The notes under the pieces: generated by a model | The model's database searches: none | Seen by the model: only the letters and a program-made list of their open reading frames with translations | What the model was told of the DNA's origin: nothing | Position numbers and translations under genes: made by a program | DNA from: Gracilinanus agilis | Taxonomy: Eukaryota | Direction: 5' to 3' | Length of the DNA: 64,000 nucleotides | Assembly (NCBI RefSeq): GCF_016433145.1 | Contig: NC_058135.1 | Span: 288,185,810-288,249,809, forward strand | Shown here: positions 15,912 through 64,000 of the stretch, in pieces | Layout of the letters: each line of letters begins with the position of its first letter | Position numbering within the stretch: position 1 is the first letter of the stretch

Positions 15912-17048
15912 TCAGGCCAGCTCCTGTATCAGGGTCCTCGGGGCTGGGGGGCGCGGCCCTCCCCACAAACGCTCCAGCTCCCCACTCAGGGCTTCCACCT
16001 GGCCAGCTTCCTCCTCCTCAGCCCGGTACTCCTGGGCACAGTCCAGGGCCAGAGACATAAGCTCTTCCTCGTGCTCGTTGGTCCAGGACAGCAAGTACTG
16101 GCACTTCTTGCGGGCACGGTAGAGACGTTCCCGAAGCTGGCCCGCAGGCATGAGGTGGCGCGCATGCCCAAACGCACGCGCCAGGTGCCCCAGAGCAGCC
16201 AATGTGTAGCCCTTCTGCAGGCCAACCTGTGGACCTTCACCCAGCAGGATACGGGCAGCCTCTCGCATGGAGCCCCGAGTGCCCAGGGGCCCAGGTGGGT
16301 GCGCGCCCGCCCTCAGCGCATGGGCAGCTGCATGCAGAGCCTCACGTGTGGAGCGGAAGTTGTGGTGGGCGCCGAGCGCGCCGGCCACGCCCAGCACTGT
16401 GGAGCACAGGTCCAGCAGCATCTCCGGGTCATCGTCCAGACCACCGTGATAGAGGGCCTGCGCATGCGCGTAGGCAAAGAGCACGTTAGGCAGCTGAAAG
16501 CGCAGCAGGGGTGAAGGCGCGCGGCCGCCGCTTAGACGCGCCAGGGCGGGGATGGTGGCAGGCACGGGCGGCGGCGCGGCCACAGGCTCTGGCTCACCCT
16601 GGGTAGGCTCAGGTACAGACGCGGGCTCCGAAGCGCCGTCCTCGTGCAGCTCCTCCAGCAGCGGCGCCCGCGTCCCGCTGCGCCACCACCACGGCCGCCA
16701 GGGCGGGAGCAACTTTCCGGCCTCTCCTCGGCTCAAGAGTCGCTCAAAGGCTGCTTTTTCGGCGGGCTGCAACCGCTCCCACAGGCCGTCCAGGCCCTGG
16801 TGCTCCTCCGACGCTTCGGCCTCGCGCTGCTCTCGAAGGCGGCGCAGGGCGCCCGCCAAGCGGCTGGGCGAGGCCTTGCGGCCGCGGAGTTCGCCCAACA
16901 CCTGGTCTCGGTAGAAGGCCTCGGCACACGCCCCGTGAGCCCGGTAGCAGGCCAGCGAGCAGTAGGGCACATTGCAGCGAGGGCAGGTGTAGCGCGCCGG
17001 CTTCGCCTCGCCTGGGGGACACTGACCACACGGCCCCGCAGGCTCCAT
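15912..17048 (-). CDS. ZNHIT2: Zinc finger HIT domain-containing protein 2, 378 aa, intronless
   Basis: Single ORF MEPAGPCGQCP...RYTCPRCNVPYCSLACYRAHGACAEAFYRDQVL (zf-HIT); also RFQLPNVLFAYAH and ARKKCQYLLSWTNE. Position between TM7SF2 and FAU is syntenic. Confidence 0.97.
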   Translation of the reverse strand: MEPAGPCGQCPPGEAKPARYTCPRCNVPYCSLACYRAHGACAEAFYRDQVLGELRGRKASPSRLAGALRRLREQREAEASEEHQGLDGLWERLQPAEKAAFERLLSRGEAGKLLPPWRPWWWRSGTRAPLLEELHEDGASEPASVPEPTQGEPEPVAAPPPVPATIPALARLSGGRAPSPLLRFQLPNVLFAYAHAQALYHGGLDDDPEMLLDLCSTVLGVAGALGAHHNFRSTREALHAAAHALRAGAHPPGPLGTRGSMREAARILLGEGPQVGLQKGYTLAALGHLARAFGHARHLMPAGQLRERLYRARKKCQYLLSWTNEHEEELMSLALDCAQEYRAEEEEAGQVEALSGELERLWGGPRPPAPRTLIQELA

Positions 17049-30000: not shown

Positions 30001-31067
30001 GAGGAACAGCAACAGCCCAGAGTTCTGGGTAAGGAGGCAGAACATGAGGAAGTCTCTTGGGACTTATGACAGTTGACATGCCCTGGAGCAGAACAGGGCA
30101 AGGAGAGAGAATGCAAATGAACTTCTCAAATTATCTTTCTGGTTCAGCTGCATGTTCTAAGAGGCAGCAGAAATTGAGCCCTGTCCTTGGTACCATTCAC
30201 AGGGATGATAGATGGGGATGTTGAACCTTCCCTTCTCAACTTCTAGAGGGCAACAAATCCACCAATCCCTCCTTTTCCCCCTTTCTGGCTTAGTGTCACC
30301 CCATTCCTCTATCAAGAAGCCACTCACAGACAATCCGGCAGTGAAAGAGCCAGGAGATGTTTGGGCTGCGCTCCATCTGGGCAAGAAGAGCAGAGGACTA
30401 TTAGAAAATTCCCCTTTTCTCTTCCCTAGCAGCTGTGCCCCAAACTCGCAACAGTTGTGATTCCCATCTTGTGTCTTCAGCTCCCCCTCCCTACTAGGTT
30501 GGCATCCCCCACCCCCACTCACAAAATCGACCCGATCCTCAGCCAGCCAGTGGAAACACTTGAGGAAGAGGAGGAGGGTGAAGAGCGCCACGAACCGGGG
30601 GCTGAAGTCATCCCGAAAGACGGTGAAGGCCAGGCAGGTTTCTGTGACAGCGTACCAGGAGCGCTCCAGGAGGTGCTGGGAGGGAGAGGTTCTGCTGGTA
30701 TTGTGCTGCCCCCGTCCCCCTGCGCGCTCCCCTTCCCCTTGTCCCCTCTCTCCTCACCTCCATCTCGGCCGCTCGCAGCTGCCCGAAAAACACTTTGCCC
30801 ATCACCTTGCCCAGGAGGAAGACAAGTACGAAGGCCTGGATGTATAGGACCTGGGGAGTGGAGGTGCGGGCCTCAGTAGCCGCCCGTCCCCGCCGCCCCA
30901 CTCCCCCTGCCCCTTCCCCACTCGCAGTCACTCACGGCCATGCTCGGGCTGGACTTGGTCAGGTAGACCACGGTGGGGTAGAACTGGTGCTTGAGGTAGT
31001 AGGCGTGGGCCACCACCGCCCCGGTCAGCGCCAGGCTGGCCGCCATCATCACGGCCGTGCGGAACAT
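27084..31067 (-). CDS. SYVN1: E3 ubiquitin-protein ligase synoviolin (HRD1), 594 aa
   Basis: Coding exons 31067-30936, 30850-30758, 30675-30523, 30376-30328, 29851-29748, 29658-29532, 29444-29345, 28970-28905, 28816-28700, 28604-28441, 28280-28155, 27921-27820, 27712-27526, 27428-27265, 27184-27084; 1785 nt. Starts MFRTAVMMAASLALTG; RING-H2 [33 protein letters not shown]; ends ELRRRRLQKLESPASH. Confidence 0.98.
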
Positions 31068-31245
31068 GGCCCCGGCCGGGACACCTGCGGGAGGACAGGG
31101 GTGTGAGTGGCCTCGCGAGGCGCACGTGTCCGGCCCGGTGGGGGGGGCGGCGGAGCGGCGGGGAGCGTCCCGGTTGGGACGGACCCCAGCCCCTCCTTGG
31201 CGTTCCGGGCCCCGCGCTCCGCTCCCAGCCCCGGCCAGCACTCAC

Positions 31246-31433
31246 CGGGACGGAGCTCAGGGCTCCCGAGCCCGCTGGTCCCGCGGCGGCGAAGGAAGCG
31301 GCTGCGATAACCCAGGGAACAGCGGGAAAGCGCTGACGGGGACCGTGACGGGGGCGGCGGCGGATCCACCAGTTAACAACACTCCCCACCCCCTCCGGGC
31401 CGGAAGTGAGAGCCGCAGACACCTCACTTCCGG
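31246..31433 (-). other. SYVN1: SYVN1 non-coding exon 1 / proximal promoter with paired ETS sites
   Basis: CCG|GTGAGT donor at 31245; CCGGAAGT 31400-31407 and ACTTCCGG 31426-31433. Exact TSS unknown. Confidence 0.7.
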
Positions 31434-31931
31434 CCGCTCGGAGCGGCAGGGTGGGACATACCAAATGCACCAGCCCCCGTTACCCGCCGACACCGAGGAA
31501 CCCTTTTTGGATCTGAGCTTAATGGGGACTTGGGGCGCCGCGGATAGGGGATAGGGGAGTGGAGGGGCACCTCGGGGACCGGACGTAGGTTCTGGGGGCG
31601 TCGGGCGTCCCCCGTCTCCTAGGTCACACATGGTATCATCCGGATGGCCAGGAGGAGGATTCTACACCAAGATGACCAGCGGGGGGGCCCCCCTCCCGGT
31701 GCGCTGTACGCGGACTGAACCATTCCGAGGGGTGTACGGCCAAGGGGATTGAGATGGGACAATTCAGGGGAGGGAAGGAAGAAGGGAGAATGAGGCTTAC
31801 AAGACCAAGAAAAACACGTAAAAGGTTTCAGCGAGCGCGTTCCCCTTGGGGGACGAAACAGCGTTCTTCTCGCCAGGAGAATATCAGTATCGCCAGCTCC
31901 CCACTTAGGTCTGTGGAGTGAGATGGGTCGC

Positions 31932-31950
31932 CGTGGCTGTCTTTGATTGG
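31932..31950 (-). promoter_or_regulatory. ER stress response element (ERSE-I)
   Basis: Minus strand reads CCAAT-caaagacag-CCACG, an exact CCAAT-N9-CCACG consensus. Confidence 0.85.
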
Positions 31951-31962
31951 GGAGGTTGGGGC

Positions 31963-31974
31963 ACGCGGACCAAT
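31963..31974 (-). promoter_or_regulatory. UPRE-II element
   Basis: Minus strand reads ATTGGTCCGCGT, matching the UPRE-II sequence I recall being described for the human HRD1 promoter. Confidence 0.75.
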
Positions 31975-33297
31975 AAAAAAAGGTTAAACCCACAAACCAA
32001 TAGGAAAAGCGGGCTTCGCTCAGCTGTTGCTAAGAGGAACGACTCTGGAAGCCAAGCCAACTGTCAACACGGGAGAAAGACGCACAGGGCGGGGGCGTGG
32101 CCGCCGCGGTGGTGATGGTAGTGGGGAAAGATAGAGGATCTGCAAACCTGGGCTGCGCAGGACTGCTGGTCCTTACCGTGGGCAGCGCCTCCTGACTACG
32201 TGACCTTAAGCCTGAAAGGCTCCCCTCCGCCCCGTTTGCCCCCAGGCAACAAAGCCTCAGTGCCCAGCTCCTCCAGGTCTTGCACTTCTCTAGTCACTGC
32301 CCCTTCGGTTGGGAGGGGCAGGAGGAGGGGGAGTGGCTGGGCGTCTATTCCCTACATTAGGGAATGGGATCCCCTGCCGCCCCGCAAAGAGGCTACTGGG
32401 AAACAAAGTATTCTCGGAGGAAAAGGTCTTGGTTGTTACTTATAGCGCCCCTGGGGGTCCGTGCAGTCCAGCTCTTAACCTGGGCCCACAGGCTCCCCAG
32501 CATCAGCAGGGACTGCCCAGGCGGACTGGATCCCTACTGGAGTCGATATTCGAACCCAGCAAGAATAACTTTCTTTGCCTGGACTCCGCTGTTTGTCCCT
32601 GGGCTCTACAGGGGGTCTCACTGGGTGCTCCTACTGCCTTTGCTGGAACTGTCTGCCTCCCCACCACTGTTCTATCTACCCAATGCGATTTTAGCTAAAA
32701 CAGGGTGAAAGGGGAGGGTGGGTATCTCTCTAGAATAGATATTGAGTCAGGGACCAGAGGCAGAATGACTGGCTTGAGTTCTGTCAGTAGGAGCCTGGCT
32801 ATAACCATGAGGCTACTGTCAAATGTGGGAGGGGGCATTAAAGGGATTGGGGGAGATGTGAGGTCATTGCCACCAGGGGCAAAGGGAGATGCCCTATCCA
32901 GATGGTATCTGGTGAGCTGGCAGAAACAGTTTGTCTTTCCAAAGTTCCTGGTGACATCAGATTTGGGAAGAGGCTACCTGGCTCCTTCTCCTGAAGAGGA
33001 GGAAAAGAGCAAGCACTTAGAACCCGGAATGAATGCTCAGAGAACAAAGTGAAAGATTTGCTTAGGGGGAAAGGAACAACTGTGTACTCTTAAGTAGTAC
33101 TGGGCCTACGCCTTCCCTCAGGTGTGGGGCAAGGCCCTGACTTGGGGATCTTCTCAGGACAGGACCCAGGGCCCCCTGGGAAGGGCGTGAAATGTAGACT
33201 GAGTGTGTCTTGAAGCCCAGTAGTTAGAGCAAGCATCTTATCTTGCTTCTGAATGGAGGGGGCTTAGAGGAAACCTTGGAGCAGGGGGTCTTAACCA

Positions 33298-45514: not shown

Positions 45515-46000
45515 TCTGTGGTGGCTTCCTTTACAACAACCTGGTCACTGTGTAGGGTTCTCCTTCCTGAGAGGAAATCAGAATGTTCTACCAAGGGGAT
45601 CTGATGGTGACTCTGAGGTGAGGGCAGTGAGGTATAGGGTTTTCTCCTCAGGTCCAATGGAGGCCACTGAAGAGCAGGGAGAGCAAAGACTCTGCCCCAA
45701 GCTCCCGGGGTTAGTTATAGGGTCAGAGTGGACTAGAGCCCAGAGTTCTTTCTGGCCTCCTTGTCCAAGGCTCTTCTTCTCATTCTTTTTGTACTTTTTG
45801 GTGTTCCCAAGGCTCTAGCATAACACACTTGCTAAGTGGAACTGAACTAAAGAGGAAGAAGAGAAAGGCCCTAGAAATTTCATCTACGTAGGGAATCCTT
45901 TAAGTCTATGTCTTGTGAGAAGGCAATGAAAAAGGCACATCCTAAAGGAATACATCTCACATCAGGAGAGGTCTCCTGTGAGTGAATTTTGGGAGGGTAG
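45515..46000. repeat. Duplicated block X, copy A (direct repeat of 58970-59480)
   Basis: Shared GGCTTCCTTTA.AACAACCTGGTCACTGTGTAG, TTTTCTCCTCAGGTCCA, GGGGTTAGTTATAGGG, ACTTGCTAAGTGGAAC and GTGAGTGAAT..GGGAG. Confidence 0.85.
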
Positions 46001-46588: not shown

Positions 46589-46759
46589 NNNNNNNNNNNN
46601 NNNNNNNNNNNNNNNNNNNNNNNNNNNNNNNNNNNNNNNNNNNNNNNNNNNNNNNNNNNNNNNNNNNNNNNNNNNNNNNNNNNNNNNNNNNNNNNNNNNN
46701 NNNNNNNNNNNNNNNNNNNNNNNNNNNNNNNNNNNNNNNNNNNNNNNNNNNNNNNNNNN
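46589..46759. other. Assembly gap (171 N)
   Basis: Run of N. Confidence 1.
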
Positions 46760-47617
46760 GTGGGTAAATACACACAAATACACACACAGGGGTTCTTCTG
46801 GGGAGAAAGGGATGAAGGAAGAATGAAGGATGTAGATGTAGTACTATCTTAACCAAATACAAAAGGGCTGTGACAATGAGAGTGAATGACAGTTGGGATC
46901 CAACTGCCATGTAGACTAAGATATCCAGGGAAAAATACAATAGGAATAAAAAAAACACTTTTTAATAGTTAACTTAAGATTAAAAGAGGTGGGAGAGGTC
47001 ACAATACTCTAAAATACTATGGGATCAATTCAGGGTTAAAGATTAAAGGTCTGGGAAATCCCTACTCTACTCTATGCAGGCTGCCAGGACACAAGGGACT
47101 AATGGGATCTCACATAGATGGTTTGATGGTCTTGATCAGTAGCTCAAAATGTATCAGTCCAAGTATATTCCAAGAGCACAGGTTCCAGCCAACTAACTCT
47201 TCAGAGAAGTCAGGGAGACTGATTTTGCTTGTCCACTAAACAAGACAGTATTCTCAACCTTCTCTCCTTGATCCTGCTAATTGAGATGTTCCAGATGTTG
47301 CTCAGAGATACCCAAAATCACAGGCTCTCAGGTCAGTGGTTTCCCAACTCCTTCAAAACCCCCAACTGCCTTTAGAGAGAGTCCACTGTGTTCAGCCCCT
47401 TGCTGTGTTCCAGGTTGGAACCTCAGCTCTTGCCTGCCTATCTAAACTTCCAAATCTGCCTTTATAAGTTTGCCTACAACACACCTTAGAATCAATACTA
47501 TGTATTGGTTCCAAGGCAGAAGAGTGGTAAGCTAGGCAATGGGGGTTAAGTGACTTGCCCAAGGTCACACAGCTAGGAAGTATCTAATTTGAACCCAGGA
47601 CTTCCCATCTCTAGGCC

Positions 47618-48082
47618 TTTTCAGGACTGACCCAGGGCCCCCTGGAAAGAAAGGTCTGAATGTGGACTGAGGGTGTCACTGAAGCCCTGTTGTTCTGGAA
47701 GCATCTGATCTCACTTCTGAAAGGAGGAAGCTTAAAAGAAGCATTAGAGGGCCAACTGTTTTATTTGTGCTGGTCTTAAAGATAGGAAATCCTTGATGCC
47801 CAGGATGAGACTGGCACAGAGTAGAGCCTGTCTTTGGGCCAGACTGTAGTTCAGGGATACTGAACATTCTGAGGCCGTTGGATAGCCAGGTGATATCACC
47901 AGGGGGGATGGTCCAGCTGTAGAAGTGCAGGAAACCTGGAGGAAGTGAGCAAATCCAGGCCAGACTGCATCAAGGGAGCAAGGGGATATCTGCTGTGGGA
48001 CAGGGTGAGGCTTTTGGTAGGGGCAACAAGAAGGTGAAAGAGCCTCTGGCTGACAGGCTACTAAGGAGGCTGAAGAAGAAAG
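47618..48082 (+). repeat. Partial copy A of the SYVN1-upstream cassette
   Basis: Near-identical to 63135-63620 (e.g. GTGGACTGAGGGTGTCACTGAAGCCCTGTTGTTCTGGAAGCATCTGATCTCACTTCTGAAAGGAG); more diverged from 33160-33290 and 35430-35630. Confidence 0.9.
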
Positions 48083-58969: not shown

Positions 58970-59480
58970 GCTGGCTTCCTTTATAACAACCTGGTCACTG
59001 TGTAGTCTTCTCTTTTTCAAGAGGAAACTAGAATGTTCTACCAAGGAGATCAGATGGTGACTCTGGGGATCATAGCATCTCCTGGAGAGCAATGAGGCAT
59101 AGTTTTCTCCTCAGGTCCAGAGAAGAGCACTACGGAGCAGGGAGGGCAAAGGCTAAGTTCCTGGGGTTAGTTATAGGGTTTGAGTGAACTAGAGCCCAGA
59201 ACTCTTTCTGGCTTCCTTGTCCAAGACTCTTCTTTTCATTCTTTTGAACCTCTTGGTGTTCCCAGGGCTTTAGCACAGCAGACTTGCTAAGTGGAACAAA
59301 ACTGAAGAGGAGGAGTAAGGCCCTAGGAATTTTGTCCAAGAAGAGGATCCTCTTTCTTAAGTGCTAACACCTGTGTAGCTAGAACTTTGGGGAAGAGTGT
59401 GTACTGGCTCAGGTGCAGAAACGAGTGTGGCTTCAAGATGAATCTTCTGAGGAAAGTGAGTGAATATCGGGAGGTAGGAA
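58970..59480. repeat. Duplicated block X, copy B
   Basis: Direct-repeat homolog of 45515-46000. Confidence 0.85.
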
Positions 59481-61020: not shown

Positions 61021-61775
61021 AGGTGGCAGCTGGGGACAGGGAGGAAGAAAGGAGGAGGAAAGGGGGGGGAGATGGAAGAAAAGAGGGAATAAAGAAGAAG
61101 AAAGCAAAGATCAAGGAGGGAAGAGGGGGATGGAAGGGAGGAGAGAGGAAGAAAAGTATCTGCCAAAGAGAAGTCAGATCAACAGCTATGATGGCAATGT
61201 TTAAGACGACAACTTCATAAAAAAAAACCAAAAGATGCACATTTTCAAACATTTTTAATGATTTTAATGAGATGGATGGAGGAGGCAAAAGGATGGAGAG
61301 GAGGAAAGGAAAAAAGGAGTAAGAGAATGTAAAGAGAAAAAGGGAGAGAAGAGGAAAGGAATAGAGAAAGGGAAAGAGGAGAAAAAGAAGAAGGAAGGAG
61401 AGAGCCAAAAGGGAGGGAGAGGGGAAGTGGACAGAAAGAGAAAGGAAAGAGAAGGAAATGGGAAGAGAAGGGAAGAAAAGGGAAAGGGGAAAGGAGGAGG
61501 AAGGGAAGGAGAAGAGAAAGAGGAAGAGGAAAGAAGAGAGAAAAGGAGGACAATGGAAGAGGATAGAGAGGAAAAGAGGAGGGAGAAGGGTGAAAGAGAA
61601 GGGGGAGAGACAAAAGGGAAGGAGGGAGGGGGAAGAGGAAGGAGGAAGAGCGAGAGAAAGGAAAAAGGAGGAAAGGGGAAGAGGAGGAGGAAAGAGAAGA
61701 GAGAGTGAGAAAAAAAGAGAGGAAGAGAAGAGGGTAAAAGGAAGGGGAGAAGAGGAAGGAGGGAGAAGAGCAAGG
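61021..61775 (+). repeat. Polypurine (GA-rich) low-complexity tract
   Basis: Almost pure A/G at 61021-61160 and 61271-61775. Confidence 0.95.
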
Positions 61776-61789
61776 AACTCCCGAAGCCA

Positions 61790-63650
61790 TTCCCTCCCCA
61801 AAGGTCTGGCCCCCTCCCCCCAGGAGCTTGGCATCCGGCCCCGGCAGGGCTGAGCGCCCACGACCGGACCACGGCAGCTTACCCCGGTGACGGCCCGCGG
61901 AAGGACCCGGCCCGGGATACACTCAGCCCTAGGAGCCCAGAGAGACTGCAGGTGAAGAAGCAGACGCTGGCCGCCTAGTAACCAGCCTCCCCGCCCCTTC
62001 CCAGCCGGAAGTTCGAGCTGGAGAACATTAACTTCCGGCCCTGGATGGAGGGGGGGGAACGGAGAGCTCTGGATGTACCAAATGCACCTCCGAACGTGGC
62101 CATATCCGCACAGATCATTCGTGAATCCTTTAGAAAATTACCAAGAGCTGTTGTCATGCGGAACCTAGGAAATCAGAAGTGTTTTTGGCAAGAAACTCCT
62201 TGCTCTGGAAGCACTGATTTCCCCCGTTTTTTGGGTAAAACATGGTATTATCTTCACGCCCACTACCGCCCAGAGGGCTCCAGCCCCGCCCGCGGCCCGT
62301 ACTTAGGCCTGTACCATTGGTGGGGGTGGGCGGTCAGAGAGATTGATTTTGGAGGGCCAAAGGGCCGAAATCCGGAAGAAATGAGGCGAGGAGCCACACC
62401 TATAGCAACAGATACCCAAACTTTGATGGCCGCACGATTCTCAAGGGGAACGTTGGTCCCTGACGCTGAGAATTAAGTTCTTCTAAATTAGAAGCACCAC
62501 GGTCATAGTCCATGCCCAGAGATAGATCCTCGTGGCTCCTTTTGATTCGTCAAGTGGAAGGCTCGCCGACCAATAGGAAAAGCGTGTTGATGCCAGGCGG
62601 ACAGGACTCTGTCGACCAACCAGGATCCGAAGGGCGGGGAGGAGGCGTGGTCCCAGCTGAGGCTCCAAGGGGCAGAGCCTCCCTGGGGCGTGGCAGGGGT
62701 TCTGGAAAGTGACAAAGGCGCCGTAGGCTATTAATCCTGGACTGAGGAAAGTGGCGGGTCCAGAAGTTTACCTGAGCTGTTCCCAGGACCACCCAGCAGG
62801 GGAAAGAGTTTAAGGCTGGGTACTGGAAGCTTCCGTGCTGTTCGTGTATCCCGCCTCCCCTGTCTTGTGACTTTGGACTTCGCCTGTCGCCCCGGGCCGC
62901 AGGCCTCTCTGCCCACCGTAGGCATCTGTGCCCAACTCCTCCCGGCCCTTTGTCTTCCCTTGTCTCTGCCTCTTCTGTTGGGATGGGGATGGGGAAGGGG
63001 AGAGAGGCTAGAGCGTTTCTGACCCTAAGAGTTACCTACTTGCCGGTAGCTTAGGTTTGCTCAGGGCAAAAGAACAACAGTGTCGCCTCAAATATCCTTC
63101 CCCCAGGTGTGGGGCAGGGCCCTGACTGGAGGATCTTTTCAGGACTGGCCCAGGAAAGAAAGGTTTGAATGTGGACTGAGGGTGTCACTGAAGCCCTGTT
63201 GTTCTGGAAGCATCTGATCTCACTTCTGAAAGGAGGGAGCTTAGAAGAAACCTTAGAGGGCCAACTGTTTTATTTGTGCTGGTCTTAAAGATAGGAAATC
63301 CTTGGTGCCCAGGATGAGACTGGCATAGAGTAGAGCCTGTCTTTGGGCCAGACTGTAGTTCAGGAACACTGAACATCCTGAGGCCTTTGGATAGCCAGGG
63401 GATATGTAATATAGGATTTTAGCATTGCCATTTTGGCATATTACAGATATCACCAGGGCGATGGTCCAGCTGCAGAAGTGCAGGAAACCCAGAGGAAGTG
63501 ATGCAGGTCAGACTATCAAGGGAGCCAAGGGGTGTCTGAAGTGGTACAGGGTGAGGCTTGTAGTGGAGGTAGGCTGATTTTTACCCTTGAAACAAGAAGG
63601 TGAAAGAGCCTCTGGCTCTGTCCCTTGGACTGACAAGCCACTATTTCTAG
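61790..63650 (-). promoter_or_regulatory. Duplicated SYVN1 promoter + exon 1 + start of intron 1 (cassette copy B)
   Basis: Paired ETS sites 62005-62012 and 62031-62038 (same 26-bp offset as 31400/31426); shared TACCAAATGCACC (62076 / 31460) and ACCAATAGGAAAAGCG (62569 / 31996); minus-strand GGG|GTAAGC donor at 61882; colinear with 31150-33290 plus 35410-35630. Confidence 0.85.
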
Positions 63651-63684
63651 TGCCTTTCATCTCTCAGTTATTTCCAGCTTATCC

Positions 63685-64000
63685 TGTGTTAGGGACCAAG
63701 ACTTTAAGAAAAGATAGTCACTCTTCTAAGAATAGATATCATTCACTCTTCTAAGATAAGATATTGATCATAGGCCCAGCCTTGCTTGGAGATAGTAAGA
63801 CGCCACCAGAGATTTTCTATGCTCCCTTTCCGCATTCCTTTCCCCCTTAGTATCTGCCCACCCCCTTCTGTCCTCAGCGTATATATTCTTGTCATAGATC
63901 TCCAATAAACGAGCCTCGTATCCATCAAAACGACTCTGTGTCTTGCACGCGAGGTTTCCCCTCTTCTTCCCCTATGGGTAATTAGGTTGCCGTTTCCCTG
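63685..64000 (+). mobile_element. Young LTR, truncated by the window end
   Basis: Starts TGTGTTAGGG; TATA-like GTATATAT ~63879; AATAAA 63904-63909; CpG retained. Confidence 0.6.

What the first reader, a model, noticed from the sequence alone, without database searches (positions are those of the whole stretch)
61790..63650. Orphan duplicate of the SYVN1 promoter and exon 1 that may drive a new, unannotated transcript
Seen: a colinear, same-orientation copy of the SYVN1 5' region lies 30 kb upstream of the gene. It keeps the inverted ETS pair with identical spacing, a GC box, a CCAAT box, high CpG density, an exon-1 homolog (61883-~62030) with a strong GTAAG donor, and ~100 bp of intron 1 (GGGGCCGGATGCCAAG vs GGGGCCCGGAACGCCAAG). 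It breaks before the first coding exon. The copy is clearly diverged, yet its motifs and CpGs survive. Inference: it is an unmethylated, possibly active promoter whose exon 1 splices leftward into 33-61 kb, i.e. lineage-specific gene or lncRNA birth by promoter capture.
Basis: partly seen in the sequence, partly recalled or inferred. Interest (0 to 1): 0.8.

Follow-up and report, generated by a model that had tools for sequence, protein, structure and literature searches.

The report
Old partial copy of SYVN1 promoter
About 30 kb upstream of the opossum SYVN1 gene lies an old, badly diverged copy of that gene's promoter that is still a CpG island, but the available RNA data show no use of its SYVN1-like first exon, only faint unspliced RNA on the opposite flank.

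Summary
The duplicate is real. A colinear, same-strand chain of matches links 61979-63258 to the SYVN1 5' region at 31374-33281, at 72-80% identity and z = 6-43 against shuffles. The inverted ETS pair has identical spacing. A GC box and a CCAAT block also survive.

The left end is weaker than claimed. The "exon-1 homolog" is only marginally significant (z = 4.2). The "100 bp of intron 1" is not significant (z = 0.7). No SYVN1 coding or gene-body remnant lies to the left.

The copy is a true CpG island: GC 0.58 and CpG o/e 0.66, against 0.11 in the surrounding intergenic DNA, with no TG/CA decay relative to the parent. That argues for long-term germline hypomethylation. The parent's ER-stress element has lost its CCAAT half in the copy.

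A third, younger partial copy sits at 47617-48051.

Three runs of the same animal read as RNA-seq because they hold about the exonic share of SYVN1. None shows the exon-1 homolog or any splice joint. One run has low-depth unspliced contigs on the opposite flank (62781-63092, 63498-63654).

Verdict: this is an orphan CpG island made by partial gene duplication, probably weakly active toward the + strand. Leftward splicing from exon 1 is unsupported. It is an ordinary kind of feature of modest interest.

The parts
61790..62720 (.). CpG island of the copy (GC 0.58, CpG o/e 0.66, 52 CpG)
   Evidence: The strict island scan gives 61826-62150 and 62201-62725. The intergenic background has o/e 0.11.
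61883..62004 (-). Putative exon-1 homolog of SYVN1, ending in a GGTAAG donor (intron starts at 61882). Homology is only marginal.
   Evidence: z = 4.2, 69% over 113 columns; donor. X2 has no RNA contig here.
62005..62038 (.). Inverted ETS pair CCGGAAGT-N18-ACTTCCGG, with the same spacing as the parent pair at 31400-31433. The motifs match 16/16 and the spacer 9/18.
   Evidence: segment z = 12.5
61989..61996 (.). GC box CCCCGCCC (the parent has CCCCACCC at 31384)
62076..62088 (.). Exact 13-base block TACCAAATGCACC shared with parent 31459-31471
62531..62549 (-). Degenerate ER-stress element CGTGG-N9-ATTCG. The parent, at 31932-31950, has the intact form CGTGG-N9-ATTGG (= CCAAT-N9-CCACG).
   Evidence: and sequence
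62569..62584 (+). CCAAT block, a 16/16 exact match to parent 31996-32011
62632..62653 (.). GC box GGGCGGGG plus GGCGTGG, matching parent 32087-32105
62781..63092 (.). Stretch held by RNA run X2 as two overlapping unspliced contigs (depth 2.5-5.6). Direction is unknown.
   Evidence: records 9, 10. X2 is read as RNA because it holds 0.44 of the SYVN1 gene words.
63498..63654 (.). Second stretch held by RNA run X2 (depth 2.4, 0 mismatches, so it is specific to this copy)
   Evidence: record 12
62922..63258 (+). Non-island upstream flank homologous to SYVN1 upstream 32254-32354 and 33054-33281 (73-80% identity)
   Evidence: z = 20 and 43
63135..63617 (+). Part shared with the third, younger copy B at 47617-48051
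   Evidence: K2P 0.07-0.10
47617..48051 (+). Copy B, a partial third copy of the upstream flank. It starts directly after a SINE and has no promoter part.
61285..61775 (+). Polypurine tract (at least 92% A/G) abutting the left end of the copy, where homology to SYVN1 ends
31245..32130 (-). Parent: SYVN1 promoter CpG island with inferred exon 1 (31245-31399), the ETS pair, the ERSE and the CCAAT/GC boxes

Best explanation
The stretch is the relic of an old local duplication of the 5' end of SYVN1. The duplication took the promoter CpG island, possibly the non-coding exon 1, and about 1.5 kb of upstream flank, but no coding exon. The flank was later duplicated again, giving copy B at 47.6 kb.

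The island has stayed CpG-rich. This is most likely because its retained factor sites keep it unmethylated in the germ line: the paired ETS/GABP-type sites, GC boxes and a CCAAT box. It therefore behaves as an orphan CpG island.

It has lost the NF-Y half of the parent's ER-stress element, so it should no longer respond to ER stress as SYVN1 does.

The only transcription seen is weak and unspliced. It lies on the + strand side, downstream of the CCAAT/GC-box module, from about 62.78 kb toward an LTR poly(A) signal at 63904. It does not come from the SYVN1-like exon 1.

Shown: homology, island status, motif states, and the presence and position of RNA contigs. Inferred: hypomethylation, factor binding, direction and start of the RNA, and its termination in the LTR.
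For: - Colinear significant homology.
- Copies group as ((B,C),A), with K2P 0.07-0.10 for B-C against 0.23-0.27 for A-C.
- CpG o/e is 0.66, against 0.11 in the background and 0.04-0.24 in the duplicated non-island flanks.
- CpG fate is symmetric between copy and parent: 5 against 7 TG/CA changes.
- The ETS pair is kept 16/16 while its spacer is 9/18. The ERSE is broken at its CCAAT half.
- X1 is a whole-genome DNA run with uniform depth of about 24 across 61791-63714, and one contig spans 61621-63195.
- X2, X3 and X4 hold 0.33-0.44 of the SYVN1 gene words, about its exonic share, so they read as RNA runs.
- X2 contigs lie only at 62781-63092 and 63498-63654. Nothing covers 61791-62780, and there are no joints.
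- X2's contigs total 91 Mb, about 3% of the 3.2 Gb that the whole-genome run X1 assembles to. Random DNA contamination is therefore an unlikely source of 25% coverage here.
- There is no poly(A) signal on the + strand between 62700 and the LTR AATAAA at 63904.
Against: - The RNA evidence is one sample at depth 2-6, held as contigs without direction.
- No start site, methylation or chromatin data exist.
- The run-length distribution of exact matches is about what a uniform 65% identity would give. Extra conservation of motifs rests mainly on the ETS pair and is not rigorously shown (own calculation).
- The window ends at 64000, so a gene to the right that owns this promoter cannot be excluded.
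- Presence in other marsupials could not be tested.
Confidence: 0.55

Rival explanations
1. One reading: the SYVN1-like exon 1 (61883-62030, minus strand) is transcribed from the retained ETS-pair core promoter. It splices from its GTAAG donor into new exons in 33-61 kb, giving a lineage-specific lncRNA or gene.
For: The ETS pair, the GC box and a GGTAAG donor at 61883 are present. The first minus-strand poly(A) signals lie about 770 nt downstream. The stretch is a CpG island.
Against: X2 has no RNA contig, joint or loose end at 61883, and X3 and X4 fell below the listing threshold, although all three hold the SYVN1 exons. Homology of the exon part is marginal and that of the intron part is absent. 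The donor is followed within 100 nt by about 500 nt of polypyrimidine on that strand. No ORF or domain lies downstream. The only differences between X1 and the window within 61791-63195 cluster in this part (61845, 61913, 61932).
Confidence: 0.1
2. The island is not orphan. It is the promoter, or an alternative upstream promoter, of a + strand gene that lies beyond the right end of the window. The RNA at 62781-63654 would be its first exon or intron.
For: RNA contigs lie only on the right side of the island. CCAAT and GC boxes sit 130-210 bp left of the first contig. Distal CpG islands acting as alternative promoters are documented (PMC5378174, title and abstract seen).
Against: No splice joint leaves the stretch. 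A high-copy LTR with a poly(A) signal follows at 63687-63904. Nothing beyond 64000 can be seen.
Confidence: 0.2
3. It is an inert relic. The island is kept CpG-rich for reasons other than promoter use, for example Polycomb-type or factor-bound unmethylated DNA without productive initiation, or GC-biased gene conversion. The X2 contigs are transcriptional noise.
For: Two of the three RNA runs show nothing, and the third only depth 2-6. The island is weaker than the parent, with 52 against 92 CpG and an AT-richer middle at 62110-62250. The ERSE is broken.
Against: Unmethylated CpG islands usually show some initiation (PMC2944787 abstract). RNA coverage of 25% of the stretch is far above the 3% of the genome that X2 holds.
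Confidence: 0.15

Closest known systems
Orphan CpG islands (Illingworth et al. 2010, PMC2944787)
   Same: A CpG island remote from any recognisable gene start. It has promoter-type motifs and faint local transcription.
   Different: Its origin is traceable here: it is a diverged paralog of a named housekeeping promoter, SYVN1. Methylation state and initiation are not measured.
Partial (5'-end-only) gene duplicates and duplicated regulatory elements in segmental duplications; pseudogene- or duplicate-derived lncRNAs (PMC4316772; bioRxiv 10.64898/2025.12.03.692127, titles and abstracts seen)
   Same: A local duplication copied the promoter and upstream flank without the coding body, and part of it was copied again (copy B).
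   Different: It is much older and more diverged (65-80% identity) than typical annotated segmental duplications. No stable transcript has been shown.
SYVN1/HRD1 promoter, an ER-stress-responsive (ERSE/UPRE) CpG-island promoter (Yamamoto et al. 2008, cited in PMC8301375; the paper itself is not held)
   Same: It shares the ETS pair, the GC/CACCC box, the CCAAT block, GGCGTGG and the CGTGG half of the ERSE, in the same order.
   Different: The CCAAT half of the ERSE is mutated (ATTGG to ATTCG). No coding exons follow. Sequence between the motifs is largely unalignable.

Membership tests
CpG island (Gardiner-Garden and Frommer criteria) | Length of at least 200 bp, GC of at least 0.5, CpG o/e of at least 0.6 | tested here: met
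   61790-62720 is 931 bp with GC 0.58 and o/e 0.66
Orphan CpG-island promoter | Unmethylated in vivo | not testable with these tools
   Only inferred from CpG retention and the lack of TG/CA decay
Orphan CpG-island promoter | Transcription initiates in the island | tested here: inconclusive
   X2 RNA contigs start at 62781 at the island's right edge. They have no direction and no cap data, and only 1 of 3 RNA runs shows them.
Orphan CpG-island promoter | Not the start of an annotated gene | tested here: inconclusive
   No coding remnant or domain lies within 33-64 kb. The window ends at 64000 and no annotation is available.
Paralog (partial duplicate) of the SYVN1 5' region | Colinear, same-strand similarity above chance | tested here: met
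   Six colinear HSPs with E down to 6e-34; segment z = 6-43
Paralog (partial duplicate) of the SYVN1 5' region | Includes exon 1 and the start of intron 1 | tested here: inconclusive
   Exon part z = 4.2; intron part z = 0.7
ERSE-driven unfolded-protein-response promoter | Intact CCAAT-N9-CCACG | tested here: not met
   The copy reads CGTGG-N9-ATTCG at 62531-62549. The parent is intact at 31932-31950.
Paired-ETS (GABP-type) housekeeping core promoter | Two CCGGAAGT sites close together | tested here: met
   62005 (+) and 62031 (-), 26 bp apart as in the parent. Factor binding itself was not tested.

The most novel reading that the evidence does not exclude
The duplicated SYVN1 island is a living bidirectional promoter. 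In opossums it has given birth to a new, mostly unspliced non-coding RNA on the + strand, starting near 62.75 kb and ending at the poly(A) signal of an inserted LTR at 63.9 kb. It has been uncoupled from ER-stress control by loss of the NF-Y half of the ERSE. This would be a dated example of lncRNA birth by promoter duplication plus a transposon-supplied terminator.
Probability: 0.25. Interest if true: 0.45.

Novelty: new member of a known kind. Interest (0 to 1): 0.3.

Why it matters
If the island is active, the locus is a clean, datable case of how a housekeeping promoter copied without its gene stays unmethylated for tens of millions of years. It would also show how such a copy sheds one regulatory input (ER stress) and seeds a new transcript.

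As it stands, it is an example of a common class: an orphan CpG island derived from a partial duplication. It is useful mainly for annotation. The island at 62 kb should not be mistaken for a SYVN1 alternative promoter or for a gene.

Tried and rejected
- Default blastn found only two of the homologous blocks. A relaxed scoring scheme was needed.
- MAFFT mis-registered the 13-base TACCAAATGCACC block.
- tblastx and sensitive blastn of the SYVN1 gene body against 33-64 kb found nothing, so there is no hidden pseudogene body.
- An exact look-up of five ORFs from the copy in the 15-billion-protein collection found none. It was meant as a route to orthologous contigs of other marsupials.
- A degenerate 28-base pattern of the ETS-pair region gave 0 matches in metagenome contigs.
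- Rfam at gathering threshold gave no hits on the whole window.
- Pfam found nothing on the 143-aa ORF at 62045-62473, so it is a spurious ORF.
- X1 was offered by the 'rna' search but proved to be whole-genome DNA: uniform depth of about 24 and 3.2 Gb of contigs. It gives no expression evidence.
- A test of motif conservation by exact-run lengths was not significant against a uniform 65% identity (own calculation).
- Yamamoto et al. 2008 on the human HRD1 promoter is not held.
- A literature search for a SYVN1 bidirectional promoter gave nothing relevant.

Full report
**Context.** The window carries SYVN1 on the minus strand. The first coding exon, 30937-31067, translates to MFRTAVMMAASLALTG... 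and matches PDB chains named E3 ubiquitin-protein ligase synoviolin at E = 4e-22. A zf-HIT ORF at 15915-17048 on the minus strand, ZNHIT2-like, fits the usual mammalian gene order. The SYVN1 promoter is a CpG island at about 30876-32225. Its exon 1 (about 31245-31399) and intron 1 (31091-31244) are inferred from splice consensus only.

**Is the duplicate there?** Yes, but it is old.
- Default blastn finds only two blocks.
- Relaxed scoring finds six colinear, same-strand blocks linking 61979-63258 to 31374-33281, with E from 7e-4 to 6e-34. One is an exact 16-mer, 62569-62584 = 31996-32011.
- Segment-wise semi-global alignment against 300 dinucleotide shuffles gives these z-scores: ETS part 12.5, ERSE/CCAAT part 6.4, right shoulder 20, distal flank 43.
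- The exon-1 part (61883-62006) reaches only z = 4.2.
- The intron-1 part (61790-61882) reaches z = 0.7, which is not distinguishable from chance in GC-rich DNA.
- A global alignment of the island gives 65% identity in aligned columns and 20% gap columns.
- Nothing of the SYVN1 coding or intronic body lies to the left.
- Homology ends where a polypurine tract of about 490 bp begins (61285-61775).
- A whole-genome DNA run holds the stretch in one contig, 61621-63195, at single-copy depth. The arrangement is therefore real.

**More copies.** A third partial copy, B at 47617-48051, matches 63135-63617. In the three-way alignment B and C share derived states. K2P distance is 0.07-0.10 for B-C against 0.23-0.27 for A-C and A-B. 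There were therefore two rounds of duplication: an old one from SYVN1's 5' region and a younger one of the flank. B starts right after a SINE and has no promoter part.

**CpG island status.** The stretch 61790-62720 has GC 0.58 and CpG o/e 0.66 with 52 CpG. The comparison values are:

| Stretch | CpG o/e |
|---|---|
| Copy island, 61790-62720 | 0.66 |
| Parent island | 0.82 |
| Intergenic, 36-61 kb | 0.11 |
| Copy's own non-island flank | 0.24 |
| Copy B | 0.04 |

Of 66 parent CpGs in the alignment, 19 are kept and only 5 read TG/CA in the copy. The reverse count is 7. There is thus no methylation-decay asymmetry.

At the observed divergence, a methylated sequence should have lost most of its CpGs, as the flanks did. 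This rests on the established higher transition rate of methylated CpG. The inference is long-term germ-line hypomethylation.

**Motifs.**
- The two ETS octamers are 16/16 identical, while the 18-base spacer is 9/18.
- A 13-base block (62076-62088), the CCAAT block and GGGCGGGG/GGCGTGG are also kept.
- The parent's ERSE (CGTGG-N9-ATTGG, 31932-31950) reads CGTGG-N9-ATTCG in the copy (62531-62549). This agrees with the scan's other note, s1-176276.
- By my own calculation, the lengths of exact runs are about what a uniform 65% identity predicts. Selective retention of motifs is therefore suggestive, not proven.

**Transcription.**
- The run search returned X1 and X2.
- X1 is DNA: uniform word depth of about 24 and 3.2 Gb of contigs.
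- A control search with the SYVN1 gene body showed that X2, X3 and X4, from the same organism and study, hold 0.44, 0.33 and 0.33 of its words. That is about the exonic share, so I read them as RNA-seq. X1 holds 0.98.
- On the copy, X2 has contigs only at 62781-63092 (depth 2.5-5.6) and 63498-63654 (depth 2.4, no mismatch, hence specific to this copy), plus repeat-derived pieces.
- Nothing covers 61791-62780. There are no joints and no loose end at 61883.
- X3 and X4 did not reach the listing threshold of 5% of words.
- X2's contigs total 91 Mb, about 3% of the 3.2 Gb that the whole-genome run X1 assembles to. Coverage of 25% of this stretch is therefore unlikely to be DNA carry-over.
- The covered stretch begins 130-210 bp to the right of the GC and CCAAT boxes.
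- The + strand has no poly(A) signal until the AATAAA at 63904. That signal lies inside a high-copy LTR-like repeat starting at 63687.
- This fits a weak + strand transcript leaving the island away from the SYVN1-like exon. Direction, start and end are inferred, because contigs carry no strand.

**Conclusion.** This is an orphan CpG island created by an old partial duplication of the SYVN1 5' end. It is probably kept unmethylated by its retained ETS, GC and CCAAT sites. It has been stripped of the intact ERSE. The leftward-splicing exon-1 model is not supported but is not excluded for untested tissues.

Three other readings remain open: the island serves a gene beyond the window, it makes a new lncRNA, or it is silent. 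Cross-species presence could not be tested with the available collections. The kind of feature is known: orphan CpG islands (PMC2944787) and duplicated regulatory elements and duplicate-derived lncRNAs.

Noticed in passing
window 47617-48051 (and 63135-63617): A third, younger partial copy of the SYVN1 upstream flank (K2P 0.07-0.10 to the 63 kb copy). It begins right after a SINE at 47480-47616 and lacks the promoter part.
   Followed up: partly
window 45522-45899 and 58972-59351: Another low-copy pair at 78% identity, roughly colinear with the B-C pair. It is either an old repeat or part of the same duplicated block.
   Followed up: no
window 61040-61150 and 61285-61775: A long polypurine tract (at least 92% A/G) directly abutting the point where homology to SYVN1 stops. 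It may mark the breakpoint or be a later expansion.
   Followed up: partly
window 63687-64000: A high-copy LTR-like repeat starting TGTTAGGG, with AATAAA at 63904. Word depth in the whole-genome run reaches about 53,000 against 24 for single-copy DNA. It runs off the window end.
   Followed up: no
window 31932-31950 vs 62531-62549: The ERSE (CCAAT-N9-CCACG, on the minus strand) is intact in the SYVN1 promoter. In the copy one change, ATTGG to ATTCG, breaks its CCAAT half.
   Followed up: yes
window 31962-32011 vs 62560-62584: The parent has two CCAAT boxes 27 bp apart where the copy has one. Either the parent gained a small internal duplication or the copy lost one by deletion.
   Followed up: no
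window 61845, 61913, 61932: Within 61791-63195, these are the only three differences between the whole-genome run X1 and the window. All fall within the weakly homologous exon-1/intron-1 part.
   Followed up: no
window 46589-46759: A run of 171 N between the two B-side homology pieces. It was left as is.
   Followed up: no
window 32355-33054: About 700 bp present in the SYVN1 upstream flank has no counterpart in the copy. This is an insertion in the parent or a deletion in the copy.
   Followed up: no
window 15915-17048 (-): A single-exon 378-aa ORF with a HIT zinc finger (ZNHIT2-like), consistent with conserved synteny to the left of SYVN1.
   Followed up: partly
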